From IMG/VR virus record IMGVR_UViG_3300030019_000003, positions 62,001-126,000 of that record: a stretch of DNA of 64,000 bases; one strand, 5' to 3'. Position 1 is the stretch's first letter. Every line of letters begins with the position of its first letter. The notes under the pieces are model-generated. The model saw nothing but the letters and a program-made list of their open reading frames with translations, was not told the DNA's origin and did not search any database. Positions 2,749-45,523 of the stretch are shown in pieces. The translations under genes were made by a program, and so were the position numbers.

Positions 2749-2756
2749 GGTGATAA

Positions 2757-5700
2757 ATGGTTACTGAACCAGTATTTGTAATAAAAAATGAAGATGCCGA
2801 AGCAGGCATCGCTTTAAAAATAAACCCGGATGCTGTTAGACCTGTTTATACCTTACCTCCGGAGACAGGTATTCTTATAACAAAAGAATCTGTAGTTGCA
2901 AATGTTAATTCTCTTGTAGATGCTAATGAAAAAGAATTAGTATCTATTACTAAACCGGTGATTCTTTCACCGGTCAGTGGTAAAGAATATAATCAAACAG
3001 GAATTCATTCTACACAGTATGCATGTAGTGATACCTATCTTGGTAAGCATACTGCTAGTGATTGGGAAGTGGCTACAGACTTTGATTTTAATAATATTGA
3101 AGTTAGTAGCTATAAAGATAGTTTAAATAAAACAACTTTCTTATTTACAGCAAAACAGCATCAAGCTACTTACTACGCTAGAGTACGTTATCGTTCCGAT
3201 AACTTCTTAAGTGCGTGGTCAAGTGTGGCTAGATTTACTTCATCTTCTACATTCATAGGTAATCCTGTGCTAACAGTATCAGGTGATCAAAATGCTGCAA
3301 GTGTTAAACCTACTTTTTATGGTTCAGCTTTTGAAACCTATAATACTACGGATACACATCAAGGTAGTATGTGGGTTGTGAGTACTGATGCTGAGTTTAA
3401 AAATGTAGTTTATTCATCAGGTATTAGTACTACTAATCTATTATCATTAGAGTATCCAAACACATTACTTCCAGATGCTACCTATTATGCTAGGGTTATG
3501 TATTTTGGAGATACTTTAAACAGTTCATGGTCAGATACTATGGTACTTAAAGTAGGCGTTATGATGGATACACCTATCCTTGTAGCAAACGGATATGTTT
3601 ATGAAGGTGGATCTATTGATATTAATATTATTAATTATGATTCAGCTGCTAAATACGATATTTATACAACAGCAGGTGAGTATGTTCGTAATAATGATAT
3701 TGTGACTATCAAGGTTCCTAATAATCTTGTTATTGGTACTGAAGTTGGTGTTACTGTCAACATCATATGCTCTAATGCAACGACAGGAAAGATAGATAGC
3801 TTTCCAGGAGTGTGTAATTTTACTATTTTGAATTATCATACTACTGTAGATCAAAGTATCAGGATAGACGACTCTAACTTTAATTCCTTAGTTTCTAGTA
3901 AATCTACATTATGGATGAATCTAGATACAAATTTGTTCGGTATTAATAATAATATTAAAGATAGCAGTCACGTCTCTACTATTTCAAAATTTTATATCAA
4001 TAATAAAATTTGTGATATCAAAGCAGGTGAAATACTTACTTGTGAGACAGGCGAAACATTCGCAGTTAAGACTGTAGAAGATGACGGCGCCGTTGCAAGT
4101 ATTTATGATATTGTGAAAATAGTATCCGGAATGGGTCATGTTCTGTTATTAACTGCTAATGGTGATGTTTATGCAGCTGGTAAAAATGATAAAGGTCAGT
4201 TAGGTCTAGGTGATAAAATTGATAGACCTAATTTTGTAAGAACCTTTAGAGATGCTAAAGACATTGGTGCTGGCTATTATCATTCTATTGTTCATACAGT
4301 ATTTGGGAATATAAAGTTATCAGGTTATAATATCTACGGCCAATTGGGTAATAGCAGCATATCGGATAGCGTTGTCTGGATTGGGCCAGCTGATGCAATG
4401 CCGACAGTAAAATCATTTAGTGCCGGATTATATCATACTGCCATCATACTAGATGATGGTTTAGGTACATTAATGGTAGCTGGAGGTAATACTGATGGTC
4501 AGCTATGTTCTTTTGTGTCCACAGGTGGTTATAGCGCTACATTTGTTAAGATAACCACAGGTATTGATAAAGTAGTTTCCGGACAGTACCATGTAGCATG
4601 TAAGACAACAGATGGTTATTATGCTGGTTTCGGTAGAAACTTGGAATATCAATTAGGTATGAACATTACTGGTAACAGAATGGTGTTTACTAAATCAACA
4701 ACACATATTAACGATGTGTGGGCTAGTTCAAACTCTACTTATATTACAGATGCTAATGGTGTTCTTTATTGTGCGGGGTTAAATGCTGATGGTCAACTTG
4801 GCACTAACGATCTTATTAATAAGAATGTTTTTGTAACAACGAATCTTATTGTTGATAAAGTCTATCCACAAATGTATGGTGTTATTATTAAAACAATAGA
4901 TGGTATCTTTAAGGCTACTGGTAGAAATACTAGCGGTGAGCTGTTAATAGGTACTAAAGTATCTACTCAGGTATTTACAAATGTTACTGAGAAAGCTTTG
5001 GATGTTATTGGTATTAACGGATATTCCAATCTATTAGTTACAAAAACAGATAAGCATATGTACGGTATCGGTCTTAATAGTAGTTCACAATTTGGTAATA
5101 ACTCTACGCTACCATTGATATCTTTAACAGATATTTATGATAAAACTGTATACGGTTTGTATAAACCAGTATATTGGGTAACACTTGAAACTAACGCAAC
5201 AGTTGTACCAGATCATTTTTATAGATCTGTCGTGCAAACTAATATGACAGATATTATTCAAAATACCGAAGATGATGATTTTGAAAAGATATCTACTATT
5301 ACTACTACGGAGCCGCTAACCAATATTTTAAATACTATGTTGCAGTCTACTGCTGATAAGATATATATTTCTGATTTACTTAGTAATGTCAAATCTGGTA
5401 ACAAGTTACTAATTAATGATGGCACCGTTATAACTGTAGATACTGTTTCCGATGACGGTTCTATAGTAAATATCCCAACAATTTCTAAAATGATTTCATA
5501 TTCAAATCTAGGAACCTATGTTGTGATGTTGGAAGATGGATCAGTTTACACATGTGGTAGCAACTGGTATGGTTCCGCGGGAACAGGAAATATAGTAAAT
5601 AGCGCAGGGTGGAATAAACTTAGCATCATAGCTTCAGATATTTTTAATGCGATAAGCGGTGTGTTTGTTGTGCGCAAAAATGATGGAAAAGTATTTGCTT

Positions 5701-6800
5701 TTGGTGGGAATGGCGCAGGTCAACTTGGTGTAGGTAACACAACAGCAGCTATCACAACTTTAACAGAATGTGTTGGTATTACCAATCCAACATACATGAC
5801 TGGGTCAGGCTCTCATAGTGTAGCTATAGGACAAGACGGTAGACTATATTCAACTGGTTATAATACAGTTGGGCAACTTTGTTTAAATAACACCATTGAT
5901 ACAACGGTATTTACACCTACTAGCTATGTTGTAAAAGCCGTAGCATGTTCCTATGATAATACTTTGTTTATATCGATTGCAAATGAGTTAATGTTCGTTG
6001 GTAGGAATGCGAATGGCCAGGCTGGGTTAGGGAATACGATTGCTAAGACTACCCCTACGTTTACTAATATTTACGCAACTGATGTTAAGTGCGTTGGAGA
6101 GCTTTTTGTTATTAAAAAACTGGATGGGTTACTTTATTATGCTGGGTTGTTTGGATATCTTCTTAATGCTCTTCCCGGCACTATTGTAACTACATACACG
6201 CAGATATCAGGGTTATCGGATATAGTTTCTTTTGAAGTAAATGAGTCATCTGTATACGCCATTAATACAGAAGGTTATCTTTATACTTTTGGAAATAATC
6301 TACTTGGAAAACTTTGTTTGGGTACAACTAGTGATGTACTAGACGGGTTTCACTCTACTGGGTACAAATGTAAATTTTATAGTGTTGGTAGTTTTGGCGC
6401 TACTTTATTCTTAACTACTGGTAAAATCATTGGGTTTGGGTACAGATTTGATTATAACAGAGGTGATAACAGAATGTACCCAGCTGGCACACCTATCACA
6501 CTTGATTATGCTTATCCATTAGGTGGATCTTATAAAGTTAATAAATGGATAACCGTTAAAGAAACACTTGCAAATGTTCCAACGGCTATTTATCCATTAG
6601 CTAACATCTATTTTAACGGAATAGAAGCTATACCTAATACGGGTATAATAAATAATGGTGTTGCTAGTGTTTGGCATGACGATATAGAGTTACCTTTATG
6701 TCGATCTATTGAAACAAAAGTAGAGAGACAACAAAGCGCCTTAGTTACATTGATTACAGCGAATCTAGAAAAAATAGGTTCAAAAGTTACGGTTAGTTAG
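2757..6800 (+). CDS. Large tail fibre-like protein: Fn3/Ig-like modules plus two RCC1 propellers
   Basis: SD GAGGTG upstream; HTASDWEVATDFDF and YYARVRY...SAWS Fn3-like motifs; two blocks of GxNxxGQLG repeats. Confidence 0.8.
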   Translation: MVTEPVFVIKNEDAEAGIALKINPDAVRPVYTLPPETGILITKESVVANVNSLVDANEKELVSITKPVILSPVSGKEYNQTGIHSTQYACSDTYLGKHTASDWEVATDFDFNNIEVSSYKDSLNKTTFLFTAKQHQATYYARVRYRSDNFLSAWSSVARFTSSSTFIGNPVLTVSGDQNAASVKPTFYGSAFETYNTTDTHQGSMWVVSTDAEFKNVVYSSGISTTNLLSLEYPNTLLPDATYYARVMYFGDTLNSSWSDTMVLKVGVMMDTPILVANGYVYEGGSIDINIINYDSAAKYDIYTTAGEYVRNNDIVTIKVPNNLVIGTEVGVTVNIICSNATTGKIDSFPGVCNFTILNYHTTVDQSIRIDDSNFNSLVSSKSTLWMNLDTNLFGINNNIKDSSHVSTISKFYINNKICDIKAGEILTCETGETFAVKTVEDDGAVASIYDIVKIVSGMGHVLLLTANGDVYAAGKNDKGQLGLGDKIDRPNFVRTFRDAKDIGAGYYHSIVHTVFGNIKLSGYNIYGQLGNSSISDSVVWIGPADAMPTVKSFSAGLYHTAIILDDGLGTLMVAGGNTDGQLCSFVSTGGYSATFVKITTGIDKVVSGQYHVACKTTDGYYAGFGRNLEYQLGMNITGNRMVFTKSTTHINDVWASSNSTYITDANGVLYCAGLNADGQLGTNDLINKNVFVTTNLIVDKVYPQMYGVIIKTIDGIFKATGRNTSGELLIGTKVSTQVFTNVTEKALDVIGINGYSNLLVTKTDKHMYGIGLNSSSQFGNNSTLPLISLTDIYDKTVYGLYKPVYWVTLETNATVVPDHFYRSVVQTNMTDIIQNTEDDDFEKISTITTTEPLTNILNTMLQSTADKIYISDLLSNVKSGNKLLINDGTVITVDTVSDDGSIVNIPTISKMISYSNLGTYVVMLEDGSVYTCGSNWYGSAGTGNIVNSAGWNKLSIIASDIFNAISGVFVVRKNDGKVFAFGGNGAGQLGVGNTTAAITTLTECVGITNPTYMTGSGSHSVAIGQDGRLYSTGYNTVGQLCLNNTIDTTVFTPTSYVVKAVACSYDNTLFISIANELMFVGRNANGQAGLGNTIAKTTPTFTNIYATDVKCVGELFVIKKLDGLLYYAGLFGYLLNALPGTIVTTYTQISGLSDIVSFEVNESSVYAINTEGYLYTFGNNLLGKLCLGTTSDVLDGFHSTGYKCKFYSVGSFGATLFLTTGKIIGFGYRFDYNRGDNRMYPAGTPITLDYAYPLGGSYKVNKWITVKETLANVPTAIYPLANIYFNGIEAIPNTGIINNGVASVWHDDIELPLCRSIETKVERQQSALVTLITANLEKIGSKVTVS

Positions 6801-6818
6801 GGGATTAAACCCCTAGCT
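6795..6818 (+). terminator. Stem-loop overlapping stop codon
   Basis: AGTTAGGGG-ATTAAA-CCCCTAGCT followed by ATTTT. Confidence 0.55.
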
Positions 6819-6876
6819 ATTTTAATGACAAATAATGATTAAGCTGATTAAAAATTTTAAACATTAGGAATATATC

Positions 6877-7290
6877 ATGGGATATGAAAAAAAGATTGAA
6901 CAGAATGGTGCTTTAGCCACAGTTGTCTATGAGAACAGCAATGGTGTTAGGGTTAGCAAGAGTAAGGGTGAGATTAGAAATGCTCTTGTAGCGGCTGGAA
7001 TTGATCCTGAGGACGTATTAGCAGACATCTCGAATAGTCTTTCACTCATGATCTCATTAACATCTAGAATGTACGGCGTTATGCCGGAAGAACAAAAAGC
7101 AAATTTGTTACCTGCTGATAGAACTCTTATTGAATATGTCTTTAAGAAACATCTAGAGACAAATACAACAGCAGATCTTAAGTTGTCAAGTGAAGGTACT
7201 ACTATGATTGATAACATCTTCACACGCTGGTCAACCATCACGAACATTGTAAACAGTATTAAAAAGTTTGTAACAACTGTTACTAAATAG
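6877..7290 (+). CDS. Hypothetical protein (possible fibre chaperone/assembly factor)
   Basis: 137-aa ORF with AGGA SD between fibre genes; function inferred from context only. Confidence 0.55.
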   Translation: MGYEKKIEQNGALATVVYENSNGVRVSKSKGEIRNALVAAGIDPEDVLADISNSLSLMISLTSRMYGVMPEEQKANLLPADRTLIEYVFKKHLETNTTADLKLSSEGTTMIDNIFTRWSTITNIVNSIKKFVTTVTK

Positions 7291-7307
7291 ACATCTTAAG
7301 ATTATGG

Positions 7308-7354
7308 ATATGATAGGACCATTGAGTCCTATCATATTCTATCCACTTTTTTTT
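7308..7354 (+). terminator. Stem-loop plus T-tract
   Basis: ATATGATAGGAC-CATTGA-GTCCTATCATAT, then T8 after a short spacer. Confidence 0.7.
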
Positions 7355-7366
7355 AAAGGTTAACCT

Positions 7367-7867
7367 ATGGAATTATTTACAGGGGCTGAACAAGAAATGG
7401 AGTGTTTAAAACTACCTGTTTCTATAGCTTTTAAACGTATTAACAAGAATAAACATGAAGAATTTGCCCATAAAGCAATTTGCTGGTGGACTAAGAGTGA
7501 ACTCTATCATGTTGAAATAGTAATTGGTGATATATGGATATCATCCACTGGTAAGGGTACTCATGTTGAAGCTCTTAAAGAGGATCTTAGTGATTGGAAC
7601 GTATTAGATATTGAGGATGTTGTGTTAACAAGAGAACAGTATAATAATGTGTTAGATTGGTTAAAAGATCATGAGCATATGAAATATGATTGGTTAGCTA
7701 TTGTTATGTCACAGTTTATACCTATAGGTATTCAAAGTGATAAACGTTGGTTCTGTTCAGAGATGGCTACACGTGTATTACAACTTCTAGGATATCCACA
7801 GGTACAAGATGTAGAAGCTTATAATGTATCACCTGGTTATCTGGGAATGTTATTTAATTATAAATAA
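7367..7867 (+). CDS. Permuted papain-like (YiiX/YaeF-type NlpC/P60) enzyme
   Basis: N-terminal YHVEI His motif, KYDW, and C-terminal RWFCSE catalytic Cys in the permuted order. Confidence 0.7.
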   Translation: MELFTGAEQEMECLKLPVSIAFKRINKNKHEEFAHKAICWWTKSELYHVEIVIGDIWISSTGKGTHVEALKEDLSDWNVLDIEDVVLTREQYNNVLDWLKDHEHMKYDWLAIVMSQFIPIGIQSDKRWFCSEMATRVLQLLGYPQVQDVEAYNVSPGYLGMLFNYK

Positions 7868-7916
7868 ACAGTAAAGAATAATTACGTTTGTAGTTATGAC
7901 TTAAAAAGGAAAGAGA

Positions 7917-10900
7917 ATGAGTAAAGGACTAAAAATTAAGTCAGTAGGTGGCGGTAGTCTTACTATTAAACCTAGTGACAGTGCTGACGTAGTCATCACG
8001 TTACCAGAAAATGGTGGAGACTTAGCAGGAGAAAGTGATCTTACAGCGGGTATTGATGCTATTGTATCAACTACGGTTAGTAGTGTTGCCTTTATAGAAA
8101 AACCAGCTGTAACATCACCATTGTTAGACGCCATTGATTTTACAGGCGTGATAACAACAACACCTTTTAAGACTATCGGTAATTATAAGGGTCAACATTT
8201 ATCAACTGAATGGAAAATAGCATTAGATGCTAACTTTACCAATATGGTTTTAGATAGCACAGATATTATTAATCTTGAGGCTATAACAATAGCGGCAGGT
8301 ATAGGTGTAAAATACTTTATCAAATGTAGATATAATACTCCACTCTATGTTAGTGAATGGTCCGGCGTAGTTTCAGCTACTGGTAAAGGTATTATTATAG
8401 ATGCTCCAGTTTTGAATACTGTACCTATATCAGCTATTGATCAGAATGGATTTCCTTATAAAGATGTACGTTTTAGGGATATCTCAGGATACGGTTATAC
8501 TGAAAAAGATGGCGTGGCGCTAACTAGTTATGGTTTATATTTTATTTATGGAACATCTCTTGCTGATCTTAATACTAAGATAGCTGCATTTGATGCCGGG
8601 ACTGCAACATGGGAAAGTCTTAGTCCTGTCAATAATAACATGACGATAGTACCAAATAGTTATGTTAGTACGGTTATAACACCTGATTATAATCAAACAT
8701 TGTATGTTGCTGCTGGGTACACAGCTGTCTATGGAGCTTCTGCAGTATTGCATGGTAAATTCTCTTCACCTTTTACTATTACAGGATTGACACAACTAGT
8801 AGTTCCTGTTGTAGCAGGTGATTCAATTGGATATGAGTTTAATACATCTACATTGACAATAAGCAATTATTCTTCTAAAACAGATCTACAAGGGTATACC
8901 ATTAATGTAACTCTTGGATCAATCGTCAGAACAGGCAATACTTTAAAATGGTCACTCCCAGCTGTAACAGCAGATACTCAAGCGACTATAACTATCAGTA
9001 ATTATAGTTTAACTTCAGCTGTAGCGACAAGTCCTGTTTATAGTAAAACTATTACTGCTAAGAACGTCAATGGTACCATAACAACCAACTGGGTTGAAGA
9101 TGTTTATAGACTTAGATCAGGTAACCTTATTGCTAGAACAGCTGCTGATACACATAATGGTGCTACTGCAGGTGCTGCTATGGTTGATATTTTAAACCAT
9201 ACTAAAACATCTACTACCAGTACATTATATGTAGATGACAGAGGTTTTAAAATCAAATCAGGTGATATGCTTATTAATGAAATAGGCGATGAAGTTATTG
9301 TTGACACGGTTGTTGATGATGGTGTGAGAGAGTATGTTTTTGATAACACAACTTCTAAAATATATGCAGATAATACTCATGGTAATGCTGCAAGTACAGG
9401 ATGTGTTGTTAAGAGTGATGGGACACTATACTATGGTGCATTTACTAAGTATAACCCTAGTGTGCAGTTTAATGCTGAAGAAGGTAAAAAGTATCTTGAT
9501 GATACATGTAACTTTATTAAGTTACCTTTTAAAGCAAAGTATGTTTATTTTAATTCACATATAGCTGGATCAGGTTATGCTATTGATAGCACAGGTTGTT
9601 TATGGACTATAGGTAACACAGCTCCGTTTTTCTATGCCACAGGGTATACAACACCAACTATGAATACATGGAGAAAAACTCAAACGATCGTTATTGATTT
9701 CTACAACAGGTGGATTATTGGTAATGACAATAATATGTATGATGTGTTTGCTACTAATATTACAGCAATTGCTGTACGTGTTTGGAGAATCGTAAGAGGC
9801 TCAAATGCAGATTTACCTGTTATAGGGTGTATTAGTACAGAAGCAAATACATTATATGTAAAAGGTATTAATACCTATAGCCAGTTAGGTACAGGTAATA
9901 ATACAACAGCAGCAAATTTTGTAAGTACAGGACTAAGTGTAGTAGATGCTGTCTTCGTAGGAGATGAAAACAATATTTATGGTACCGTGTGTATTGAACA
10001 AACAACGAATCTCGTTAAAGTAGCCGGTACTAACTCATTATTTCAATTTGGTGCGTTATTAGCGACCAGTACTACGTATTTAAACTTTACATCATTAGGT
10101 ATACACGCTACCCATTTATATTATCTTATTTATGGCCATGCTTTACAAACTGTTTCAAATGGTTTATACATATCTCCTAACGCAATAGATCCTGTAAACG
10201 CTACCTATAATTCTACCATAGGCTGGAAAACAACGGCATTAGCGTGTACTGATTTGAATTCATACGCTGCGTTAATGAGCGACGGATATTGGTATGCTAA
10301 CGATAGCTCCAGAGATGGTTGCTGGTATGGTAAAGGTGACTCAAGAGCTAACTATAAAATAACTCCTAACGCAAACTTCACTACGCCAACAGGGGTATTC
10401 GGTAGAATAAGTGATTTAAATCCTTATAAGCCTAACTTATATGTAACATCTAAAACACCTTACTTCGCAGCAGTTCCTAAACGTTTATTTGTAGCAGACA
10501 CACAGTTCAACATCTATGTTGATAAACATACAAATACTGCTACCAATATTAAACAGATTGGTTGTTCTTATTCTGAACTGTATATGAATATTCTTTATAA
10601 ATATCCGCTTACAGTAACGAATACTAATACCACAACTAGCTTTAGGGTGAATGGTAAAGAGATTGATGTTAATGTAGGGGATAGAGTTGTAGATGTCAAT
10701 GGTAACATACGTAATGTTGCGGCTGTTTCTAAATCAACTTTGACAAAACAACCTTTTTGTCCATCAATAGGTCAAAACATAATAACCTCCACAGATTTTA
10801 ATTCTTTCATATCTGCAAGTGATAAAACTTATGAGTTTAAAACAAATGGCTACTATGATGAAGGATCTGTAGAAGGTATATCTCCTTATCCATTAGTGTT

Positions 10901-12116
10901 TAAGAAAATAATGAAAAATCAGTACGTTACATTGGCACTTACTACGGATGGTGTCTTATACGGTAAGGGTTCAAATATGCAGGGTGGACTAGGTGCCGGG
11001 CCATATTCATTAACCTATACTAATTTCACACCACTTGGTATGACTGATGTCGTAGATTTCTGTTTAAGTTACACTTCCACATTTGTACTTAAATGGGACG
11101 GGACTGTTTATGTAACAGGTGGTAATGATAATGGTGAATTAGGTATTAATGCTATTGATGAATATGGCGATACCGTGACAGTATACGGGTTCACACCTAT
11201 AAGTATTAAAGCAACAGCTATAGCCGCAGGGTATAATAACTTTGCTATGATAGGAACAGCTGGCGATGTTTATGTTGCCGGATCAAATCAATATAATGCT
11301 TTTTTAAATAGTGGTTTTGCAAACGGCAATGATGATAATCATCCCGCATTAACACTGCTACCATTTAAAGCAACAGCTATAGCATTAAGCAGGCATAACC
11401 TAGTGATGATAAACCAAAGTGGTTTTTTAGTCGGCACAGGCGTTGGTAAATATCTTGGGGTTGGTTCTACAGAAGGGTATAGTTCTAATATAACTACTAG
11501 TATTAAACCTAAATATATAGTAGCGGGCGAGAGTTGTACTGGGTATATTACAGATACTGATGACTTTTACGTATCTGGCAGTAATACCGCCGGTGCTATT
11601 ATAAATACTAATATATGTGATACCGTTACTATACTATCTACATATACATTAGTGGCATCTGGTATTAAAACTATTAATATTAATGGTTATAACATGTTTG
11701 CTGCTAGTTATACTGGAGAAATTATAGGATCTGGTACCAATGGTTCAAAACTTCTAGGTAACACTGGACCATCTACGTCACAGCCATTTAAAAGAATAAC
11801 AAACTCTCTTACGGATCCTGATAGTAATCTTACAGCGAAATTTAATTATCGTGATAAGTATTACAGTGTTTATACGATTACGGTTGATACACCATTCCCT
11901 AGTATACCAACTTCATTGCACATCTTACCGAAGATGGAAATAGAAGGTATCGTGGATACAGTTAGTATAACAGGTGCCGTTACTAGTTCTGGTGTTGTTA
12001 CTTCAACATTTGCTACTACCGAATTTTCTCCAGTTGAGGCTGCTAGATTATTCTTTAGAACGCATCGTAAAGCAGCAATTACAAGTTTAAATTGTTCTTT
12101 CTATACAGTAAGTTAG
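7917..12116 (+). CDS. Large tail fibre-like protein with Fn3/Ig modules and two propeller regions (second clearly RCC1-like)
   Basis: GQHLSTEWKIALDANF module shared with neighbours; GGNDNGELG, GSNMQGGLG and GINTYSQLG repeats. Confidence 0.75.
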   Translation: MSKGLKIKSVGGGSLTIKPSDSADVVITLPENGGDLAGESDLTAGIDAIVSTTVSSVAFIEKPAVTSPLLDAIDFTGVITTTPFKTIGNYKGQHLSTEWKIALDANFTNMVLDSTDIINLEAITIAAGIGVKYFIKCRYNTPLYVSEWSGVVSATGKGIIIDAPVLNTVPISAIDQNGFPYKDVRFRDISGYGYTEKDGVALTSYGLYFIYGTSLADLNTKIAAFDAGTATWESLSPVNNNMTIVPNSYVSTVITPDYNQTLYVAAGYTAVYGASAVLHGKFSSPFTITGLTQLVVPVVAGDSIGYEFNTSTLTISNYSSKTDLQGYTINVTLGSIVRTGNTLKWSLPAVTADTQATITISNYSLTSAVATSPVYSKTITAKNVNGTITTNWVEDVYRLRSGNLIARTAADTHNGATAGAAMVDILNHTKTSTTSTLYVDDRGFKIKSGDMLINEIGDEVIVDTVVDDGVREYVFDNTTSKIYADNTHGNAASTGCVVKSDGTLYYGAFTKYNPSVQFNAEEGKKYLDDTCNFIKLPFKAKYVYFNSHIAGSGYAIDSTGCLWTIGNTAPFFYATGYTTPTMNTWRKTQTIVIDFYNRWIIGNDNNMYDVFATNITAIAVRVWRIVRGSNADLPVIGCISTEANTLYVKGINTYSQLGTGNNTTAANFVSTGLSVVDAVFVGDENNIYGTVCIEQTTNLVKVAGTNSLFQFGALLATSTTYLNFTSLGIHATHLYYLIYGHALQTVSNGLYISPNAIDPVNATYNSTIGWKTTALACTDLNSYAALMSDGYWYANDSSRDGCWYGKGDSRANYKITPNANFTTPTGVFGRISDLNPYKPNLYVTSKTPYFAAVPKRLFVADTQFNIYVDKHTNTATNIKQIGCSYSELYMNILYKYPLTVTNTNTTTSFRVNGKEIDVNVGDRVVDVNGNIRNVAAVSKSTLTKQPFCPSIGQNIITSTDFNSFISASDKTYEFKTNGYYDEGSVEGISPYPLVFKKIMKNQYVTLALTTDGVLYGKGSNMQGGLGAGPYSLTYTNFTPLGMTDVVDFCLSYTSTFVLKWDGTVYVTGGNDNGELGINAIDEYGDTVTVYGFTPISIKATAIAAGYNNFAMIGTAGDVYVAGSNQYNAFLNSGFANGNDDNHPALTLLPFKATAIALSRHNLVMINQSGFLVGTGVGKYLGVGSTEGYSSNITTSIKPKYIVAGESCTGYITDTDDFYVSGSNTAGAIINTNICDTVTILSTYTLVASGIKTININGYNMFAASYTGEIIGSGTNGSKLLGNTGPSTSQPFKRITNSLTDPDSNLTAKFNYRDKYYSVYTITVDTPFPSIPTSLHILPKMEIEGIVDTVSITGAVTSSGVVTSTFATTEFSPVEAARLFFRTHRKAAITSLNCSFYTVS

Positions 12117-28022: not shown

Positions 28023-29843
28023 ATGTCATCACCATTTGACGTAGAGTCATTCATGTCTTCGCACAATATTCAAAAGACTGTCCCTGAAATTGTTAACAAT
28101 CTTAATACTACTTTTACTATTAAGATTGGTAAATCAGGTATACCTACTTTAATTTACAAAGTAGTTAAGCAACCTAAAGGTAATAAATATTACTTAGAGC
28201 CTACCTTACCAAGATGGTCACTACCGCATAAAATCTATGGGGATCTTCGTGATAAAGCAGTTATCATTTGGAATAACTATGCCAAGTTATATAATAAAGG
28301 TGGTGGCTCTAGTGGGGCTATGCTAACAGGAGATTCTGGTGCTGGTAAAGCACTACATGGTGATACACTTGTTAGGGTAACGAATGGTTGGAAACCTATT
28401 AAAGATATCAAAATTAATGATAAAGTAATTGGAAAAAATGGGTTACCTGCTAAAGTAGTCGGCGTATTTCCACAAGGAAAAGTTCCATTATACAGAATAA
28501 CCTTTGAAGATGGTAGATCAACTAGGCCCTGTGGTGATCATCTATGGGAGATTATTCAAGATGGTGTAAAGGATGTGTATAATACTAAAGAACTTATTCT
28601 AAGAATGGATAAGCATCCTGACAGTATCTTTAGTATACCGCTTTGCGATGCTGTTTTAAATACACCTTTTACGATACCTTATGAGCCAGATGATTATACT
28701 AAACGTGTTAACAATTATCTGGAAGAGCGTATTCGCAAGTGTTATTTAGACAACACTGCTGATGTTAGAGAGAAGCTTCTACGATGTCTTTTAAAAGATA
28801 GTGTAAGTGAAGAAAAACCTTTCTTTCATTATGAATGTACAAATGAATTCATCGTTAAAGATATTGTTATGTTGGCACGTTCGTTAGGGTATATTGCTAA
28901 AGAGTATGCTACTACGGACACGAAGTCAATACCGCTGTTTGGTGTACGTGTTGAAGGTGAGAAACGAACATTACAAATATCATGTATTGAACCTATTGAA
29001 GCAGCTGAGGCTTATTGTATCTCTGTTAATAATGCCGATCATCTTTATGTTGTTGAAGATTATATTGTTACGCATAATACAGAAACATGTAAGATACTCT
29101 GCAATATTGCTATTGATAACAATATGCCTGTGATCGAGGTTAGTAACCTTGAAGCAACGATGGAGCTAGTTCAATTCTTAAGCGGACTAAATGATGTTGT
29201 AATATTCCTAGATGAATTTGTAAAGAACTTTGCATCATTACAGGATACGATGTTAACAGCTCTGAGTGATCTTTATAAAACGAATAAGTTGTTTATCATT
29301 ACAGAGAATGACTCAAGGCGTATTAATCAATATATCTTAAATAGTCCTAGTCGTATAAAACATCATTATCGTTTTAAACGTATTGGTAAAGATGTTCTAG
29401 AAGAATACAGTACAGATATGAAAGTAAGAGAAGATTTCTTAAAAGATCTTCTCTTAAAATATGATAGGTCGCCTGTTTTCTCGTTTAACCATTTACGTGC
29501 TATTGTAGAAGAACATGTTGAGTACCCTAATGATAGTCTTGATGATCTTATAGGAAGACTAAATGTATCCGTGCTTGACAATACTACAGCATTAAAAGTA
29601 ACCAAGGTATATGACACTGTTGCAAAAGAAGAATTAAAGTTTGACAGCTGTATTATAGATATACCTTATTTTAATAAAGGTTACTCTCAAGCTATAAAAG
29701 TAGCAAACAATGTTTATAAGTTTAGTAAAAATGACATCATAACAACGTATGATGATGGTGATAGAATTCTTTTAGGTATTGAGAATTTGGTTATCACACT
29801 TGATCTAATTAAAGAAACGGGGGGATCGACATCACGATGGTAG
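28023..29843 (+). CDS. AAA+ ATPase containing an intein in the Walker A motif
   Basis: Spliced Walker A GDSGAGK|T, Walker B VIFLDE, sensor ITEN, SPSR arginine finger. Confidence 0.85.
   Translation: MSSPFDVESFMSSHNIQKTVPEIVNNLNTTFTIKIGKSGIPTLIYKVVKQPKGNKYYLEPTLPRWSLPHKIYGDLRDKAVIIWNNYAKLYNKGGGSSGAMLTGDSGAGKALHGDTLVRVTNGWKPIKDIKINDKVIGKNGLPAKVVGVFPQGKVPLYRITFEDGRSTRPCGDHLWEIIQDGVKDVYNTKELILRMDKHPDSIFSIPLCDAVLNTPFTIPYEPDDYTKRVNNYLEERIRKCYLDNTADVREKLLRCLLKDSVSEEKPFFHYECTNEFIVKDIVMLARSLGYIAKEYATTDTKSIPLFGVRVEGEKRTLQISCIEPIEAAEAYCISVNNADHLYVVEDYIVTHNTETCKILCNIAIDNNMPVIEVSNLEATMELVQFLSGLNDVVIFLDEFVKNFASLQDTMLTALSDLYKTNKLFIITENDSRRINQYILNSPSRIKHHYRFKRIGKDVLEEYSTDMKVREDFLKDLLLKYDRSPVFSFNHLRAIVEEHVEYPNDSLDDLIGRLNVSVLDNTTALKVTKVYDTVAKEELKFDSCIIDIPYFNKGYSQAIKVANNVYKFSKNDIITTYDDGDRILLGIENLVITLDLIKETGGSTSRW
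28350..29078 (+). mobile_element. Class 3 intein (243 aa, Ala1) with degenerate LAGLIDADG remnant
   Basis: ALHGDTLV block A, CGDHLW block B, YCISV block F, VTHN|T block G; ARSLG block H remnant. Confidence 0.85.
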
Positions 29844-36429: not shown

Positions 36430-38205
36430 GTGATTAAAAATAATAAAGGTCTTGTGGACTATACCGGTGATAATGAGGCTATGCAACTTTTAGAAGGAAC
36501 AAATAGACAAGAGTTATTAAATATGATGGGCTACGAACCTTTCGTATCGTTTATGGGCGATCTTATTCATACATGTAACATGTTCATAAGGAAAGCTGAT
36601 TCTAAAAAGAAACGCTCAAGAACAGAAGGTCTTAATGCGCTTACGTTTTTAGCAGATAGTATAGTAAATAGACATCTTGTAAAAATATCGAAATATGCTA
36701 AAACGGTTGATATTAGGTTTAAACCAAATCGATACGGATTTGAACCTTTTACCTTAGAGATATGTTTTAGATCTAAAAACGGTAGTGACATTATAACCTT
36801 ATATTTACCTAATATGGAGTTAGGGGGTGGAATACTTTCATTAGCCGAAATATTGACCCTCTCTGATACAAGACGTCCTATTAATTATTTCATTAATAAC
36901 TATCCTGTTACTGAAACTTTTAACTTTAAGATACGCATGTTTATGAGAAGTGACAATTTAGAGCACGTACGGTTCTACGCAGATGTTATGGGTAGATCTT
37001 ATCAGGGATTTATTTGTTCAACACTTATGAGTATCTACACCAACTTCTTATCTTGTATGTATGGTAAACACGACAACTATTCAGATGTCGATCTTTTAAA
37101 AGAGATGCTTGCCGAGTCTGATATTGATAATTTGATTACTTATGCTGGGCGCGAATCAGAATGTCTTATTGATGGCGAGTATACAGTAATACATACAAAC
37201 AAAGGTAGAATGTGGTGTAAGGTACTGCCAAGCAGCGATTACTTTATAGGTACGACTTCTGAAAATATAGATGTGATTATACCTATCATTACTAGTGCTG
37301 AACTTACAAAACTAAAACTACATATGAAGTTTTTTAAGAATCCCGTACTTAAAGAAGTCTATGATAAGGTTTCTAAATTAGCAGAGTTATATTATGAAGG
37401 CAATGATGCCGAACATGGTATTAATCATGTTAACGAAGTTCTTTATAAAGCTTTGGATATGAATAGAAAACAATCACTAGGTGTTGACGAGACTCATATT
37501 ATAAAAGCTGCGATGTTTCATGATATTTGCGCCACATCACACCGTAAAGATCACGAGATAAAAGGTGGTGAGGTGTATCTTACAAAAATAGCATTAGAAT
37601 ATTTTATAACAGAAAGTCGTTTCGAGTCAGAGACTATCGCTAATGCCATAGTACAACATCGTGGATCTTATAAAGGTGAGTTTACAAGTACGTTAGCAGA
37701 GCTCATTAACGCTGCTGATAGGGACAGCCCTATCTTATCCGATTGTATAAGTCGTGTATACAGCTGTGCTACAGACGATAAACTTGTCTTTAATACTGAT
37801 ATTGATACTAGTAAGATAGATCCTATGTATAAAGATAAAGTAGCTACTGCTTTACGTAATCTTGATACTTTTAAAAATAATAATATTAAGAAAGCAATAC
37901 GCCGTACATATCTGCACCTGTTAGAAAAATATTCTAGGGTTGGATACGGTAGGCGTAATGCTATCTATATTGAATACTGGAAAGATCATTTAGAAGCATT
38001 CTATACTGAAATCGATGAACTTACGGTAGCTACTTTGATGCAAAAACTATATGCACTCGGTTTTAAAAGTATTAAGTATTATGACGTTCCTGGTTTAAAA
38101 GATGTTATCAAGAGGTGCGACGGCGATACGGTAACGGCGATGCAGCATATCTTTAGAAAAAGAATAGATATAGCTACTAACGCGGCGTTTAACCCGCAGT
38201 TTTAA
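36430..38205 (+). CDS. HD-domain phosphohydrolase with long N-terminal extension
   Basis: HGINH, AAMFHDI, HEIKG, IVQHR, INAADR in the C-terminal half. Confidence 0.8.
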   Translation: MIKNNKGLVDYTGDNEAMQLLEGTNRQELLNMMGYEPFVSFMGDLIHTCNMFIRKADSKKKRSRTEGLNALTFLADSIVNRHLVKISKYAKTVDIRFKPNRYGFEPFTLEICFRSKNGSDIITLYLPNMELGGGILSLAEILTLSDTRRPINYFINNYPVTETFNFKIRMFMRSDNLEHVRFYADVMGRSYQGFICSTLMSIYTNFLSCMYGKHDNYSDVDLLKEMLAESDIDNLITYAGRESECLIDGEYTVIHTNKGRMWCKVLPSSDYFIGTTSENIDVIIPIITSAELTKLKLHMKFFKNPVLKEVYDKVSKLAELYYEGNDAEHGINHVNEVLYKALDMNRKQSLGVDETHIIKAAMFHDICATSHRKDHEIKGGEVYLTKIALEYFITESRFESETIANAIVQHRGSYKGEFTSTLAELINAADRDSPILSDCISRVYSCATDDKLVFNTDIDTSKIDPMYKDKVATALRNLDTFKNNNIKKAIRRTYLHLLEKYSRVGYGRRNAIYIEYWKDHLEAFYTEIDELTVATLMQKLYALGFKSIKYYDVPGLKDVIKRCDGDTVTAMQHIFRKRIDIATNAAFNPQF

Positions 38206-41273: not shown

Positions 41274-42377
41274 TTGGTTATGATACTATACGTTGTTACT
41301 GATATACCTGAGGTAGTATTAGCAGCCGAAAGGATTAAAAAGATATATGCCGCTATTCCTGAAATAAACATACCCATTAAAATTATTAGTATGTTCGAAC
41401 ACATAATCGAACCTGTAGAGTTTTTTGAACTCCGTGTTAGTAAGATTATGGTCAAGTATGAGTTTAAGTTAATATCCTCCGGCGGAGACATAATTGATGT
41501 TAAAACAGCAAGGGCGCCCTACACAGAATATTCCAGCGAGTCACCTTTTCAAATATCAACTATAAGTAACATACTTGTGTACCGTATGCTATCAATGATT
41601 TATAATAACCAAAAAAGGTTATTTAAAGACGATGTGTCATCACAACTGCTCTTAACCAGATATGCCAACGCACTTTGTGATGATGAAATCAAAACGAATA
41701 CTTCTGGGTGGAATGAAGCTTACAGAAATATTCCATTTGAAAAAGAAGACCAAATAGAAGTTACGAAGCCAACAGTTGTTAACTCTTTAGAGGCTAAACA
41801 ACTGTTGCGTATGCATAACAAAACTAATGGAGATTCTGGCGAGACACATGTGTTTACAAAGCATGACCATATGATTATGAAGTGGTGCAAAGATCTTGCG
41901 GGTATGTCGTACTGTGAACGTTCACAGATGGGCGCTATTATAGCTATTGATGAAAAAACATTTATCACTGGTTATAATGGTACACTAGAAGGGTTTGAAA
42001 ATAAATGTGATGAAATGGCGCTGGTGTGCAATGTTTGTAATGTTGCTGTTGACCCTAATGACTATATTGAAGGTGAAAAACATTGTAAGAAAGGTTGGGT
42101 TGAGAAAAGACCTAAATCTACTCTCAATGTTATACATGCTGAAACGAACGCGTTATTCCATGCTAATGTTAACGGTATCAGTGTTGTTGGTAAGACAATG
42201 TATATGACAACATCTCCGTGCGTCACATGCGCCAACAACATCGTTAAAGCTAAAATAGGTATGATTATCTACGAAAATGAACATGATGATCTACGAGGCT
42301 TAGAGACGTTAAGAAAAGCTGGTGTTAAAGTTGTTAAGTATACGGATCAAAGTAGCACTAATGAAAACTGCCAATAG
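41274..42377 (+). CDS. dCMP deaminase fused to an unknown N-terminal domain
   Basis: SYCERSQMGAII, TGYNG, HAETNAL, SPCVTC zinc-deaminase motifs; CNVC...HC insertion. Confidence 0.85.
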   Translation: MVMILYVVTDIPEVVLAAERIKKIYAAIPEINIPIKIISMFEHIIEPVEFFELRVSKIMVKYEFKLISSGGDIIDVKTARAPYTEYSSESPFQISTISNILVYRMLSMIYNNQKRLFKDDVSSQLLLTRYANALCDDEIKTNTSGWNEAYRNIPFEKEDQIEVTKPTVVNSLEAKQLLRMHNKTNGDSGETHVFTKHDHMIMKWCKDLAGMSYCERSQMGAIIAIDEKTFITGYNGTLEGFENKCDEMALVCNVCNVAVDPNDYIEGEKHCKKGWVEKRPKSTLNVIHAETNALFHANVNGISVVGKTMYMTTSPCVTCANNIVKAKIGMIIYENEHDDLRGLETLRKAGVKVVKYTDQSSTNENCQ

Positions 42378-43591: not shown

Positions 43592-43816
43592 ATGGTGGGT
43601 GAAACAGTTTCAAAAGTATGGGAAGTTAAACAGCGTGTTAAAAATAAACATGCCGAGTTAATCGCAGCTGGAGTAGATATAAAAATTAGTAAAGTCTATG
43701 AGAAGATGGCTACTGAACACGGATATCGCGATTGGAATACTTACGTGGCCATATTAAAACGTGCTGATGAGAAGGCAGGGTTTATTACGAATAAAAGGAA
43801 ATCCTATGGAAAATAA
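43592..43816 (+). CDS. Small helical protein (glyoxalase-superfamily / Glyoxalase_8-like)
   Basis: YEKMATEHGYRDWNT motif. Confidence 0.55.
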   Translation: MVGETVSKVWEVKQRVKNKHAELIAAGVDIKISKVYEKMATEHGYRDWNTYVAILKRADEKAGFITNKRKSYGK

Positions 43817-44315
43817 GAAACCATTAGTTAAAGATAGCGAAGGTTACTATACTGTACAATTAGGAACTATCATAGGTGAGAATGTTGTTCTTCATAAGGG
43901 AACGCCCCATGAGATTACTTTACATTACCCTGCGAAGGATTTTGCTGTAGCCTTAAATATTTTAAAGGAAGGCTTAAAAGAAAAACCTCTTCTAGGCGAA
44001 ATGGGCAGTCCTAAATATTATGAGAACATGCCGAGGGATCAACGTTTTACAATGTTTCGTACAGTCATGTTAGATAGGGTCTCACATGAAGTAGTAGATG
44101 TTGAAATGATTCCAGTAGGTGAAACAGAAACATTTATTATTAAAGGTAAGATAAAACCTTGTGGCCCAAACGGTCATATGCTAGCAGCCTTTATAGCTGA
44201 GGATAACTTTCCAGTATTTGGACTAAGATCTATAGCTAATATACATCTACTTGATGAGAAAGTTCACACACGCACAGTGGAAAGAATCATAACTTGGGAT
44301 TGGATTTTAGAATGA
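43806..44315 (+). CDS. Prohead protease-like protein (phiKZ gp175 / T4 gp21 fold), catalytic residues apparently lost
   Basis: KDSEGYYTVQLG, GEMGSP, RVSH, GKIKPCGP, FGLRS, IITWDW; His and Ser positions hold Ser and Gly. Confidence 0.7.
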   Translation: MENKKPLVKDSEGYYTVQLGTIIGENVVLHKGTPHEITLHYPAKDFAVALNILKEGLKEKPLLGEMGSPKYYENMPRDQRFTMFRTVMLDRVSHEVVDVEMIPVGETETFIIKGKIKPCGPNGHMLAAFIAEDNFPVFGLRSIANIHLLDEKVHTRTVERIITWDWILE

Positions 44316-44530
44316 AAAACATTTTTGCAAAGGTTCTAGCATTTTTAGTTTTAGCCTGTACTGGTGTGTTTTTAGCAGGAGGGTTCTTACCAATATCTTT
44401 TAAACTTATTGGTGGAATACCTCAGGCTATAACCAGTATGGAACTATGGTTTCTTACGGGTATTGTACCCTTTATTATATCTGTGCTTATTGGTAAACGC
44501 CACAATGCGGCTATGAATAAAAAACCATAA
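44312..44530 (+). CDS. Small membrane protein
   Basis: Two TM helices; ATGA overlap with the previous gene. Confidence 0.55.
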   Translation: MKNIFAKVLAFLVLACTGVFLAGGFLPISFKLIGGIPQAITSMELWFLTGIVPFIISVLIGKRHNAAMNKKP

Positions 44531-44598: not shown

Positions 44599-45384
44599 AT
44601 GAGTCCTATTTATGAGAAGTTAGATCCGTTTCATCTTTTAGATGTTAAAAATCCCCTTCATCCTTCTATCTTTATAGATACACCAGAATACAATATGTTG
44701 ATACTAGCATTACCAGCATATGTGGAGAATGAAATTGTTATAAATCCTTGTTCCTTTGTGTTCAACGATACGGAATATTATTACTATGATATTAGTGATG
44801 ATAGATTTGTAAGTTGTGGCTCTATGGAACAGATTTATGAAATTATCAATGCTAAAACGACATTAGTCATGGATATGATGGAAGAGTTTCACGATGCTAT
44901 TGATTGTGTTGAAGATATGCTTTATAATAATAAAGCTTTTAAAACATTTAATAGCTATTGGCTTACGAACAAGAAAAAACTGAGTAAGATAAGCAGACTA
45001 CTGATCGTTGCAATAGATGCTGTAGAGGATTTTCTAGAAGTCTGTGTTAAAGACGATTCGCCATTAGCAGTACACTTTAAAGATATCTATGAACATTTAG
45101 AGCGTACGGATAGATCAGCAACCTATGCTTTAGAACAGTTGGCTAACCTTTATAGCTTTTACGATAGTAGAAATAGTGAACGCATGAATAGTATCATGTA
45201 TTTTCTAACAATATTATCTGGTGTATTCTTACCACTAAGCTTGATAGTAGGTTACCTCGGTATGAACACACATGGCTTGCCATTGGTAGATAATGAATAT
45301 GGTACATGGATAGCAACAGGTATGCTATTATCGTGTGCTAGCGGTATGGGATTCCTTATACGTTACTTAAGTAATAAACACTAA
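44599..45384 (+). CDS. corA: CorA-family Mg2+/Co2+ transporter
   Basis: MNSIMYFLTILSGVFLPLSLIVGYLGMN (GMN signature), two C-terminal TMs, FKDIYEHL helix. Confidence 0.9.
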   Translation: MSPIYEKLDPFHLLDVKNPLHPSIFIDTPEYNMLILALPAYVENEIVINPCSFVFNDTEYYYYDISDDRFVSCGSMEQIYEIINAKTTLVMDMMEEFHDAIDCVEDMLYNNKAFKTFNSYWLTNKKKLSKISRLLIVAIDAVEDFLEVCVKDDSPLAVHFKDIYEHLERTDRSATYALEQLANLYSFYDSRNSERMNSIMYFLTILSGVFLPLSLIVGYLGMNTHGLPLVDNEYGTWIATGMLLSCASGMGFLIRYLSNKH

Positions 45385-45396
45385 CAAAATCAATAT

Positions 45397-45444
45397 GATA
45401 CTCAACAGCCAAGGCTGTTGAGTATCGTGACTATTTATTTTTTT
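45397..45444 (+). terminator. 14-bp inverted repeat plus T-tract
   Basis: GATACTCAACAGCC-AA-GGCTGTTGAGTATC. Confidence 0.75.
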
Positions 45445-45449
45445 ATAAG

Positions 45450-45492
45450 GATATATTATTTAATTAATAACGAACAACTAGTTTACTAGTTG
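45450..45492 (+). promoter_or_regulatory. Promoter motif plus conserved leader (second copy of 35636)
   Basis: GATATATTATTTAATTAATAACGAACAACTAGTTTACTAGTTG. Confidence 0.65.
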
Positions 45493-45523
45493 AGTTAAAA
45501 TATAAAACATTAAAGGGGATCCT

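What the first reader, a model, noticed from the sequence alone, without database searches (positions are those of the whole stretch)
43806..44315. Prohead-protease paralog missing both catalytic His and Ser
Seen: fold-defining motifs of gp175/gp21-type head proteases are kept (DxxGYYxxxLG, GExGxP, xVSH, GKIKPxGP, FxxR, IITWDW). The His of GExGHP is Ser (44007) and the Ser of FSxR is Gly (44220). The gene sits in the accessory region. Established: prohead proteases can trigger some CBASS systems. Inference: a pseudoprotease decoy or regulator. With the dead terminase, this suggests an inactivated-morphogenesis-paralog strategy.
Basis: partly seen in the sequence, partly recalled or inferred. 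Interest (0 to 1): 0.65.

Follow-up and report, generated by a model that had tools for sequence, protein, structure and literature searches.

The report
Catalytically dead prohead-protease paralog
A peat-soil jumbo phage carries, besides its working head-maturation protease, a second tail-less copy that lacks the cutting residues; this kind of "cryptic protease" was first noted in 2017 and its job is still unknown.

Summary
Window 43806-44315 (+) encodes a 169-aa protein, P0001, that is a genuine homologue of phiKZ gp175/T4 gp21-type prohead proteases. It matches Pfam Peptidase_S80 at E 2e-14. Its AlphaFold model (pLDDT 95) aligns to T4 gp21 with Z 12.8.

The catalytic His is Ser68 (AGT, 44007-44009) and the catalytic Ser is Gly139 (GGA, 44220-44222). 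The third triad residue, Asp165, is kept. The roughly 80-aa C-terminal propeptide is missing. The working copy (263 aa; GHP, FSIR) lies about 100 kb away in the same 252-kb genome, which also encodes a chimallin homologue.

This is not a one-off decay product. Short, tail-less S80 copies with an incomplete dyad are widespread. About 14 of 20 carry the same Ser-to-Gly change (FGxR). A second S80 copy occurs in 10 of 15 jumbo-phage genomes surveyed, including a Bacillus phage, and it arose at least twice.

The class was already described as a "cryptic protease" (SPN3US gp117, PhiPA3 gp143, 201phi2-1 gp206; Ali et al. 2017). This is therefore a new, unusually well-preserved member of a known kind.

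Its function is unknown. I infer a non-catalytic binding or regulatory role outside the prohead. The CBASS "decoy" idea is untested and needs recasting, because CBASS senses protease activity rather than the presence of the protease.

The parts
43806..44315 (+). CDS of the dead S80 prohead-protease paralog (169 aa, P0001)
   Evidence: ORF and translation. Pfam PF20034 at E 2.1e-14. AlphaFold pLDDT 95. T4 gp21 fold match at Z 12.8.
43796..43799 (+). AGGA ribosome-binding site, 6 nt before the ATG
   Evidence: Read from the sequence. The start is supported by the shared MENKKP N-terminus of the closest relative, P0002.
44007..44009 (+). Codon AGT = Ser68, in the column of the catalytic His (GEMGSP against GExGHP)
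   Evidence: His is invariant in 32 full-length proteases.
44220..44222 (+). Codon GGA = Gly139, in the column of the catalytic Ser (FGLR against FSIR)
   Evidence: Gly at this position is the commonest residue of the short subfamily.
44298..44300 (+). Codon GAT = Asp165, the retained third triad residue (ITWDW)
   Evidence: Invariant in all 42 aligned long and short sequences, together with E65 and R141. It corresponds to gp245 D178.
43592..43816 (+). Upstream 74-aa ORF that overlaps the paralog's start by 11 nt. It matches only the N-terminal part of Glyoxalase_8.
44312..44530 (+). Downstream 72-aa ORF with two hydrophobic stretches (read by eye as transmembrane). Its ATG overlaps the paralog's TGA (ATGA), which suggests translational coupling.
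   Evidence: Sequence. The arrangement is not conserved next to the closest relative P0002.
44599..45384 (+). CorA-like Mg2+-transporter homologue, the last gene before the terminator
   Evidence: Pfam PF01544 at E 2.8e-26.
45394..45429 (+). Intrinsic-terminator-like hairpin (16-bp stem), the probable end of the transcription unit that holds the paralog

Best explanation
**What is shown**
- The gene encodes a conserved, non-catalytic paralog (pseudoenzyme) of the phage's own S80 prohead protease.
- It consists only of the gp21-like protease core.
- The general-base His is Ser68 and the nucleophile Ser is Gly139.
- Four further positions that are conserved in active enzymes are also changed: the Asn of FNS, the second His of SHH, Gly123 and Asn136.
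- The fold and the invariant Glu65, Arg141 and Asp165 are kept.
- The roughly 80-residue C-terminal propeptide is absent.
- It belongs to a widespread subfamily of short S80 copies that coexist with an active protease in chimallivirus-like jumbo phages. This is the class of SPN3US gp117, PhiPA3 gp143 and 201phi2-1 gp206/gp210.

**What is inferred**
- In active enzymes the C-terminal propeptide is inferred to target the protease into the prohead, and it is removed by self-cleavage. Without it, the paralog is probably not packaged and acts in the cytoplasm.
- The gene lies in a non-structural gene cluster, which fits that.
- With both catalytic residues gone it cannot cut, so it must act by binding.
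- My favoured mechanism is that it uses the preserved protease core as a binding module. The partner would be either the active protease (mixed oligomers; T4 gp21 is oligomeric, from my own memory of the 5JBL paper) or Glu-containing cleavage motifs. The effect would be to restrain or buffer proteolysis outside the prohead.

**Probabilities**
- About 0.85 that it is a selected, catalytically dead S80 paralog.
- About 0.3 for the specific regulator-of-proteolysis mechanism.
For: **Homology and fold:**

**Catalytic columns**
- SPN3US gp245 H77, S153 and D178 fall in my alignment columns.
- T4 gp21 H85/S140 are the catalytic residues used to make a dead mutant.
- His, Ser and Asp are invariant in 32 full-length proteases.

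**An active copy in the same genome:** 263 aa with GHP, FSIR and TWD, scoring 187.5 bits.

**Evidence of selection rather than decay**
- The ORF is intact, and the sequence is identical in contigs from four further peat samples.
- An exhaustive search found 9 short relatives of 137-203 aa. Seven of them have Gly at the Ser column (FG[LMIV]R), and all keep Asp, Glu and Arg.
- The same signature, GSP plus FGIR, occurs in Bacillus phage AgentSmith.
- Ten of 15 jumbo-phage genomes have a second S80 copy.
- None of the 20 second copies examined has both His and Ser.
- P0042 is sister to the active P0032 (support 100/98, 49% identity) and lies on the same 188-kb contig. It shows the same truncation after WDxxxE and the same Ser-to-Gly change, so the form arose or was maintained independently.

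**Truncation:** the paralog ends at WDWILE, whereas SPN3US gp245 self-cleaves off a 64-residue C-terminal propeptide. [quoted passage not shown]

**Probably not a virion protein:** 201phi2-1 gp206 and gp210 carry no virion mass-spectrometry note, while their neighbours gp211-213 do.
Against: - There are no expression data. No RNA run holds the region.
- There is no binding evidence. The one complex prediction gave no verdict.
- The active-site neighbourhood is remodelled beyond the dyad, so the substrate groove may not be preserved.
- Gene neighbours are not conserved between members, so context gives no functional clue.
- phiKZ and four other surveyed phages lack a detectable copy, so the gene is dispensable for the basic life cycle.
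- I could not inspect model coordinates, so an unconventional active site is excluded only by lack of conservation.
Confidence: 0.6

Rival explanations
1. Anti-defence factor. The dead core binds the protease-sensitive activation loops of host sensors (CBASS CD-NTases or similar tripwires) without cutting them. Alternatively it sequesters the active protease until prohead assembly. Either way, protease-sensing immunity is not triggered.
For: CBASS is activated when phage prohead proteases cleave CD-NTase loops, and dead gp21 does not activate it. The paralog sits in an accessory region. One relative, P0024, lies near a NADAR gene and a gene with a faint Acb2/Tad1 hit. The patchy distribution among related phages is typical of accessory or counter-defence genes.
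Against: It is entirely untested. There is no match to a known anti-defence family, although I did not scan one specifically. Neighbours are mostly hypothetical or nucleotide-metabolism genes. The residues lining the active site are not conserved in the short subfamily.
Confidence: 0.12
2. Non-enzymatic assembly or structural role. The gp21-like core may have been recruited as a scaffold, chaperone or ring-forming component of the head core or another assembly. From memory of the 5JBL paper, this fold was reported there to be related to tail-tube/Hcp-like folds.
For: The fold is preserved at very high model confidence. In PhiPA3 and 201phi2-1 the paralogs lie beside virion structural genes. 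One database annotator called a member 'prohead core scaffolding protein'.
Against: It lacks the C-terminal region that is inferred to target the protease into proheads. 201phi2-1 gp206 and gp210 are not flagged as virion proteins. SPN3US gp117 is absent from the held virion tables. Here the gene is not in the head module.
Confidence: 0.1
3. A functionless remnant of a gene duplication that is slowly decaying.
For: The catalytic residues and several other conserved positions are lost. Short copies sit on long branches. Some related phages have none.
Against: The ORF is intact, has a good ribosome-binding site, and models at pLDDT 95. The subfamily is conserved across hosts from Proteobacteria to Bacillus, with invariant E, R and D and a recurrent Gly. 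The same dead, truncated form recurs independently. The sequence is identical in five peat samples.
Confidence: 0.08
4. It is still a protease and uses a relocated catalytic pair, for example Ser68 or Ser93 with His94 or His124.
For: Asp165 is kept. Ser68 occupies the His site. The SH94 motif is present.
Against: No alternative Ser, His or Cys is conserved among the short copies. Position 68 is S, N, T, R, I, A, E or F in different members, and the SH motif is absent in most. The nucleophile position is Gly. No precedent is known to me.
Confidence: 0.03

Closest known systems
'Cryptic protease' paralogs of giant phages: SPN3US gp117, PhiPA3 gp143, 201phi2-1 gp206 (and gp210), Erwinia phage homologues (Ali et al. 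2017, PMC5694885)
   Same: It is a second, diverged S80-like gene in a genome that also has the canonical prohead protease. The C-terminus is truncated and the catalytic set is incomplete. It lies away from the head-protease locus. Its function is unknown.
   Different: This copy is much less diverged: 52-54 bits to Pfam S80, against 13-25 bits for those three. It has lost both His and Ser, whereas gp117 keeps Ser and Asp and PhiPA3 gp143 keeps His. Orthology to any one of them is unresolved in the tree. Its nearest relative is an unnamed metagenomic protein at 35% identity.
phiKZ gp175 / SPN3US gp245 (MEROPS S80 prohead proteases)
   Same: It shares the fold and sequence family, the motifs DxxGYY, GExGxP, KPxGP, FxxR and TWD, and the retained Asp.
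   Different: It has no His and no Ser. It has no C-terminal propeptide with self-cleavage sites. It is not in the head gene module. It is about 95 aa shorter.
T4 gp21 (MEROPS S77; PDB 5JBL) and herpesvirus assemblins
   Same: It has the same fold: Z 12.8 to gp21 and Z 4-5 to herpesvirus proteases.
   Different: Sequence identity is about 15%. The gp21 catalytic residues H85 and S140 have no counterpart.
Pseudoenzymes in general (for example pseudoproteases such as iRhoms or cFLIP; from my own knowledge)
   Same: A paralog of an active enzyme keeps the fold, has lost the catalytic residues, and is maintained by selection.
   Different: No binding partner or regulatory output is known for the phage protein.

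Membership tests
Peptidase S80 (Pfam PF20034; phiKZ gp175 type) | Sequence match above the curated cut-off | tested here: met
   53.7 bits against a cut-off of 23.4, E 2.1e-14, covering residues 4-169. Genome scan gives 52.2 bits.
Peptidase S80 (Pfam PF20034; phiKZ gp175 type) | gp21/assemblin-like fold | tested here: met
   AlphaFold pLDDT 95. 5jbl: Foldseek probability 1.00; VIA-align Z 12.8, rmsd 2.8 A over 137 residues.
Peptidase S80 (Pfam PF20034; phiKZ gp175 type) | Catalytic His (xHP) | tested here: not met
   Ser68 occupies the column that is His in 37 of 37 full-length proteins.
Peptidase S80 (Pfam PF20034; phiKZ gp175 type) | Catalytic Ser ([FYC]S[ILV]R) | tested here: not met
   Gly139 occupies the column that is Ser in 37 of 37 full-length proteins.
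Peptidase S80 (Pfam PF20034; phiKZ gp175 type) | Third triad residue, Asp | tested here: met
   Asp165 is invariant.
Peptidase S80 (Pfam PF20034; phiKZ gp175 type) | C-terminal propeptide with self-cleavage (x-x-E) sites | tested here: not met
   The protein ends at WDWILE. The active copy continues for 79 more residues, including the TIES and SIED motifs. The gp245 propeptide is 64 residues.
Peptidase S80 (Pfam PF20034; phiKZ gp175 type) | Peptidase activity | not testable with these tools
   This needs a biochemical assay.
Giant-phage 'cryptic protease' paralogs (SPN3US gp117 class) | Coexists with a canonical S80 protease in the same genome | tested here: met
   The 252-kb genome has two S80 matches, at 187.5 and 52.2 bits.
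Giant-phage 'cryptic protease' paralogs (SPN3US gp117 class) | Truncated at the C-terminus and with an incomplete catalytic set | tested here: met
.
Giant-phage 'cryptic protease' paralogs (SPN3US gp117 class) | Common descent with gp117, gp143 and gp206 (one ancient duplication) | tested here: inconclusive
   Short copies fall outside the clade of active proteases (support 83/95). They sit on long, unresolved branches, and P0042 is an independent origin. A sister relation of the query to its own active copy is disfavoured but not rejected (AU p = 0.089).
Chimalliviridae-like (nucleus-forming) jumbo phage, as host genome | Chimallin (phiKZ gp54) homologue | tested here: met
   E 8.2e-9 to a 639-aa ORF at G000:C1:230418-231260. 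The match is weak (23% identity), and other hallmarks were not checked.

The most novel reading that the evidence does not exclude
The short FGxR-type dead S80 copies could be a widespread jumbo-phage counter-measure against immunity that senses protease activity, such as CBASS CD-NTase activation loops. They would act as uncleaving binders of the tripwire loops, or as cytoplasmic restrainers of the prohead protease until it is packaged.
Probability: 0.12. Interest if true: 0.8.

Novelty: new member of a known kind. Interest (0 to 1): 0.42.

Why it matters
Dead paralogs of the head-maturation protease are common in jumbo phages, are kept by selection, and have been unexplained since 2017. RefSeq still labels several of them "head maturation protease" although they cannot be proteases.

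This copy is the best-preserved one I found. It gives a confident structural model and clean alignments, and it helps define a subfamily signature:
- Gly in place of the nucleophile (FGxR).
- Loss of His.
- Retained Glu, Arg and Asp.
- Truncation right after WDxxxE.

CBASS is now known to sense prohead-protease activity. A naturally dead, tail-less protease is therefore a concrete, testable candidate for a regulator of off-target proteolysis or of immune sensing. For annotation, these genes should be named non-peptidase homologues.

Tried and rejected
- **Word-index protein search.** It found only the query itself. This is uninformative about distant relatives, and the exhaustive search then found 45.
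- **tblastn of P0001 against GenBank phages.** It gave one weak hit, Bacillus phage AgentSmith. That hit later proved to be a real dead S80 copy.
- **Sequence searches of the PDB.** They gave no significant hit. S80 and S77 are too distant by sequence, and only the fold search found T4 gp21.
- **Complex prediction of the paralog with the full-length active protease.** The result was "no answer". It is not evidence either way.
- **Pfam Terminase_6N and Terminase_6C scans of the genome.** No match.
- **Scanning the large metagenomic contigs that carry P0036, P0042 and P0024 for an active copy.** These contigs are not held. For P0042 I solved this instead by looking up its active sister P0032 on the same contig.
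- **Sequencing runs.** There are only DNA contigs from peat metagenomes, no RNA, and no sequence differences. This gave no expression evidence and no pN/pS estimate.
- **Conserved gene neighbourhood as a functional clue.** It is not conserved. The ATGA coupling to a small membrane protein seen here is absent next to the closest relative.
- **Recent duplication from the genome's own active copy.** The shared IITWDW-LE suggested it, but the tree disfavours it. It is not formally rejected (AU p = 0.089).
- In my scripts the two 201phi2-1 paralogs were mislabelled. The 145-147-aa ORF is gp206 and the 125-aa ORF is gp210.
- **Alignment of SPN3US gp117.** MAFFT misaligned the Ser region. I follow Ali et al. 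(ISPR, S126) for that protein.

Full report
**1. What is there**

Window 43806-44315 (+) is an intact ORF of 169 codons. AGGA lies 6 nt before the ATG. The alternative GTG start at 43761 is unlikely, because the closest relative begins with the same MENKKP.

The ORF's start overlaps the end of a 74-aa upstream ORF. Its TGA overlaps the ATG (44312) of a 72-aa ORF with two hydrophobic stretches. A CorA-like gene follows, and then a strong terminator-like hairpin at 45394-45429. A dCMP deaminase and several hypothetical genes lie upstream.

**2. Homology and fold**

- The protein matches Pfam Peptidase_S80 (the phiKZ gp175 family) at E 2.1e-14, 53.7 bits against a cut-off of 23.4, over residues 4-169.
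- It matches PHROG 3014, head maturation protease, at E 8.6e-16.
- An AlphaFold2 model built on 42 homologues has mean pLDDT 95 and pTM 0.86.
- Foldseek's only significant PDB hits are the three chains of T4 gp21 (5jbl; probability 1.00, E 2e-5).
- VIA-align gives Z 12.8 and rmsd 2.8 A over 137 residues for gp21. Herpesvirus proteases follow at Z 4-5.
- The ESM Atlas's own model of this sequence points to S80 clusters as well. It also lists two clusters of short (184 and 193 aa) S80-domain proteins with 74 members each.

**3. The catalytic residues**

The genome is a 252,159-bp IMG/VR virus with direct terminal repeats, and the window is bases 62001-126000 of it. It contains exactly two S80 matches.

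The strong match (187.5 bits) is a 263-aa protein at G000:C1:208432-209223, outside the window. It has GEAGH76P, FS155IR and ITWD180W, and a C-terminal tail with x-x-E motifs. It lies in a block of large ORFs that I did not annotate.

BLASTP of the two copies gives 29% identity and E 1e-16. It aligns GEMGSP with GEAGHP and FGLR with FSIR.

The columns are the right ones:
- In my 54-sequence alignment, SPN3US gp245 has H77, S153 and D178 in these columns, which is the triad reported by Ali et al..
- T4 gp21 H85/S140 is the pair mutated to make a dead enzyme in the CBASS work.
- His, Ser and Asp are invariant in 32 full-length proteases.
- A profile-profile comparison of short against long members (probability 99.95%, E 1.3e-38) pairs the consensus "gsP" with "gHP" and "FGmR" with "FSIR".

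P0001 therefore has Ser68 (AGT, 44007-44009), Gly139 (GGA, 44220-44222) and a retained Asp165 (GAT, 44298-44300).

**4. It is one of many**

The word-index search found only the protein itself. I therefore ran the exhaustive search, which returned 45 proteins at E <= 1e-3.

The proteins of roughly 240-268 aa all have H-P, [FYC]S[ILV]R and D. The nine short ones (137-203 aa) all lack Ser: seven have Gly, one Ala and one Lys. All nine also lack His at the aligned position. All nine keep Asp, the Glu of GE and the Arg of FxxR.

Scanning 15 jumbo-phage genomes with the Pfam model found a second, weaker copy in 10:
- With a second copy: this genome, SPN3US, 201phi2-1 (two extra copies), PhiPA3, Burkholderia FLC9, Cronobacter CR5, Vibrio pVp-JHP1101, Erwinia pEa_SNUABM_11 (below the cut-off), Erwinia Machina and Bacillus AgentSmith.
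- Without one: phiKZ, RP12, LucasX, Simmy50 and RTH11.

Of the 20 second copies I examined, none has both His and Ser, and about 14 have Gly at the Ser position. The Bacillus phage protein carries the same GSP and FGIR as the one here.

Four further positions are conserved in active enzymes and lost in the short group: the Asn of FNS, the second His of SHH, Gly123 and Asn136.

**5. Evolution**

In a maximum-likelihood tree, the active proteases plus P0042 form one group (support 83/95). The other short copies fall outside it on long, poorly resolved branches. The query pairs weakly with P0002 (86/64). Long-branch effects cannot be excluded. A tree that forces the query together with its own active copy is 24 log-likelihood units worse but is not rejected (AU p = 0.089).

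P0042 is a clear separate case:
- It is sister to the active P0032 (support 100/98), with 49% identity.
- Both lie on the same 188-kb contig, about 100 kb apart.
- It too ends right after WDLVIE and has Arg for His and Gly for Ser.

The same dead, tail-less form has therefore arisen, or been maintained through gene conversion, at least twice. With the intact ORFs and the confident fold, this argues for selection and against simple decay.

The locus is identical in contigs from four further peat metagenome samples. Sequence matching the region, at least in part, is held by about 20 more.

**6. What is already known**

Ali et al. [quoted passage not shown] They named SPN3US gp117, Erwinia phage homologues, 201phi2-1 gp206 and PhiPA3 gp143. 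[quoted passage not shown]

SPN3US gp245 removes a 64-residue C-terminal propeptide by self-cleavage. I found no later functional study of these paralogs. RefSeq labels several of them "head maturation protease".

The kind is therefore known and the function is open. What this case adds:
- It is the least diverged member (52-54 bits, against 13-41 bits for the second copies in all surveyed phages except Bacillus phage AgentSmith, which scores 51.6).
- It has lost both dyad residues.
- It helps show a subfamily signature: FGxR, retained E, R and D, and an end after WDxxxE.

**7. How it probably works**

*Shown.* It has the fold, lacks the nucleophile and the general base, and lacks the C-terminal tail. 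It coexists with an active enzyme. The subfamily is conserved.

*Inferred.* It cannot cleave. Lacking the tail, it is probably not packaged. This is consistent with 201phi2-1 gp206 and gp210 not being flagged as virion proteins while their neighbours are, and with gp117 being absent from the held SPN3US virion tables. It should therefore act by binding.

I favour a role as a cytoplasmic binder of the active protease or of Glu-containing cleavage motifs, restraining proteolysis outside the prohead (about 0.3). The one complex prediction gave no verdict and counts for nothing.

*The anti-defence variant* is attractive. CBASS CD-NTases are switched on when prohead proteases cut an activation loop, and dead gp21 does not trigger them. 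A dead copy could help only by shielding the loops or by holding back the active enzyme. I put this at about 0.12.

*Other rivals:*
- Structural or assembly role: 0.1.
- Decaying remnant: 0.08.
- Relocated active site: 0.03. No alternative Ser, His or Cys is conserved.

**8. The "dead terminase" link**

I did not examine this in depth. The only window ORF with terminase-family PHROG hits is 28023-29843. Those hits cover residues 100-200 and overlap a Hint/intein Pfam match at 124-161. The same segment also hits primase and DnaC families, and the rest of the protein matches an ATPase family. This looks like an intein-driven match. The proposed "inactivated-morphogenesis-paralog strategy" is therefore not supported by my data.

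**9. Verdict**

The finding is a new member of a known kind and of moderate interest, because the function of the class is unresolved and is now testable.

Noticed in passing
window 44312-44530: A 72-aa ORF with two hydrophobic stretches (read by eye as transmembrane). Its ATG overlaps the paralog's TGA (ATGA), which suggests translational coupling. The gene after the closest relative, P0002, is unrelated and soluble.
   Followed up: partly
window 44599-45384 and 45394-45429: A phage-encoded CorA-like Mg2+ transporter homologue (PF01544, E 2.8e-26), followed by a 16-bp-stem terminator-like hairpin.
   Followed up: no
window 43592-43816: A 74-aa ORF that matches only the first ~55 positions of Glyoxalase_8 (PF20066). 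It is either a fragment or a stand-alone N-terminal domain.
   Followed up: no
window 41274-42377; L028; L041; L058: Dead S80 copies lie beside pyrimidine-metabolism genes in four unrelated contexts. Here it is a dCMP deaminase with a ~190-aa N-terminal extension. Next to P0024 are thymidylate synthase and kinase. Next to AgentSmith_182 is dCTP deaminase. Near CR5_110 are ThyA and MazG. This may only reflect a shared early/middle gene region.
   Followed up: partly
window 28023-29843: A 606-aa ORF. Its PHROG hits to terminase large subunit, primase and DnaC all fall in residues ~100-200 and overlap a Hint/intein match (residues 124-161). The C-terminal part matches an ATPase PHROG (E 2.5e-43).
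   Followed up: partly
window 130-12116: Three very large ORFs (872, 1347 and 1399 aa) with strong RCC1-repeat PHROG matches. One also has a tail-protein match. They are probably fibre or host-recognition proteins.
   Followed up: no
window 36430-38205: A 591-aa protein with an HD domain and a weak PIN-like match.
   Followed up: no
window 45446-45497: Short stretches (32-51 nt) just after the terminator match other, longer contigs in the peat runs, whose sequence then diverges. This is either a repeated intergenic element of this phage or sequence shared with relatives.
   Followed up: no
G000:C1:230418-231260 (outside the window; L022): A 639-aa ORF with a weak but significant match to phiKZ gp54 chimallin (E 8e-9, 23% identity). 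The phage is probably nucleus-forming. It comes from peat metagenomes.
   Followed up: partly
L024, L056, L059 (201phi2-1 gp206/gp210, Machina gp131, SPN3US gp117): RefSeq names these dyad-deficient short copies 'head maturation protease'. Vibrio phage pVp-JHP1101_087 is called 'prohead core scaffolding protein'. These annotations transfer a function that the sequences cannot have.
   Followed up: yes
L028 2494-2871 and 1861-2406: Upstream of the dead S80 copy P0024 lie a NADAR-domain gene and a gene with a faint Acb2/Tad1-hairpin hit. This hints at an anti-defence neighbourhood.
   Followed up: no
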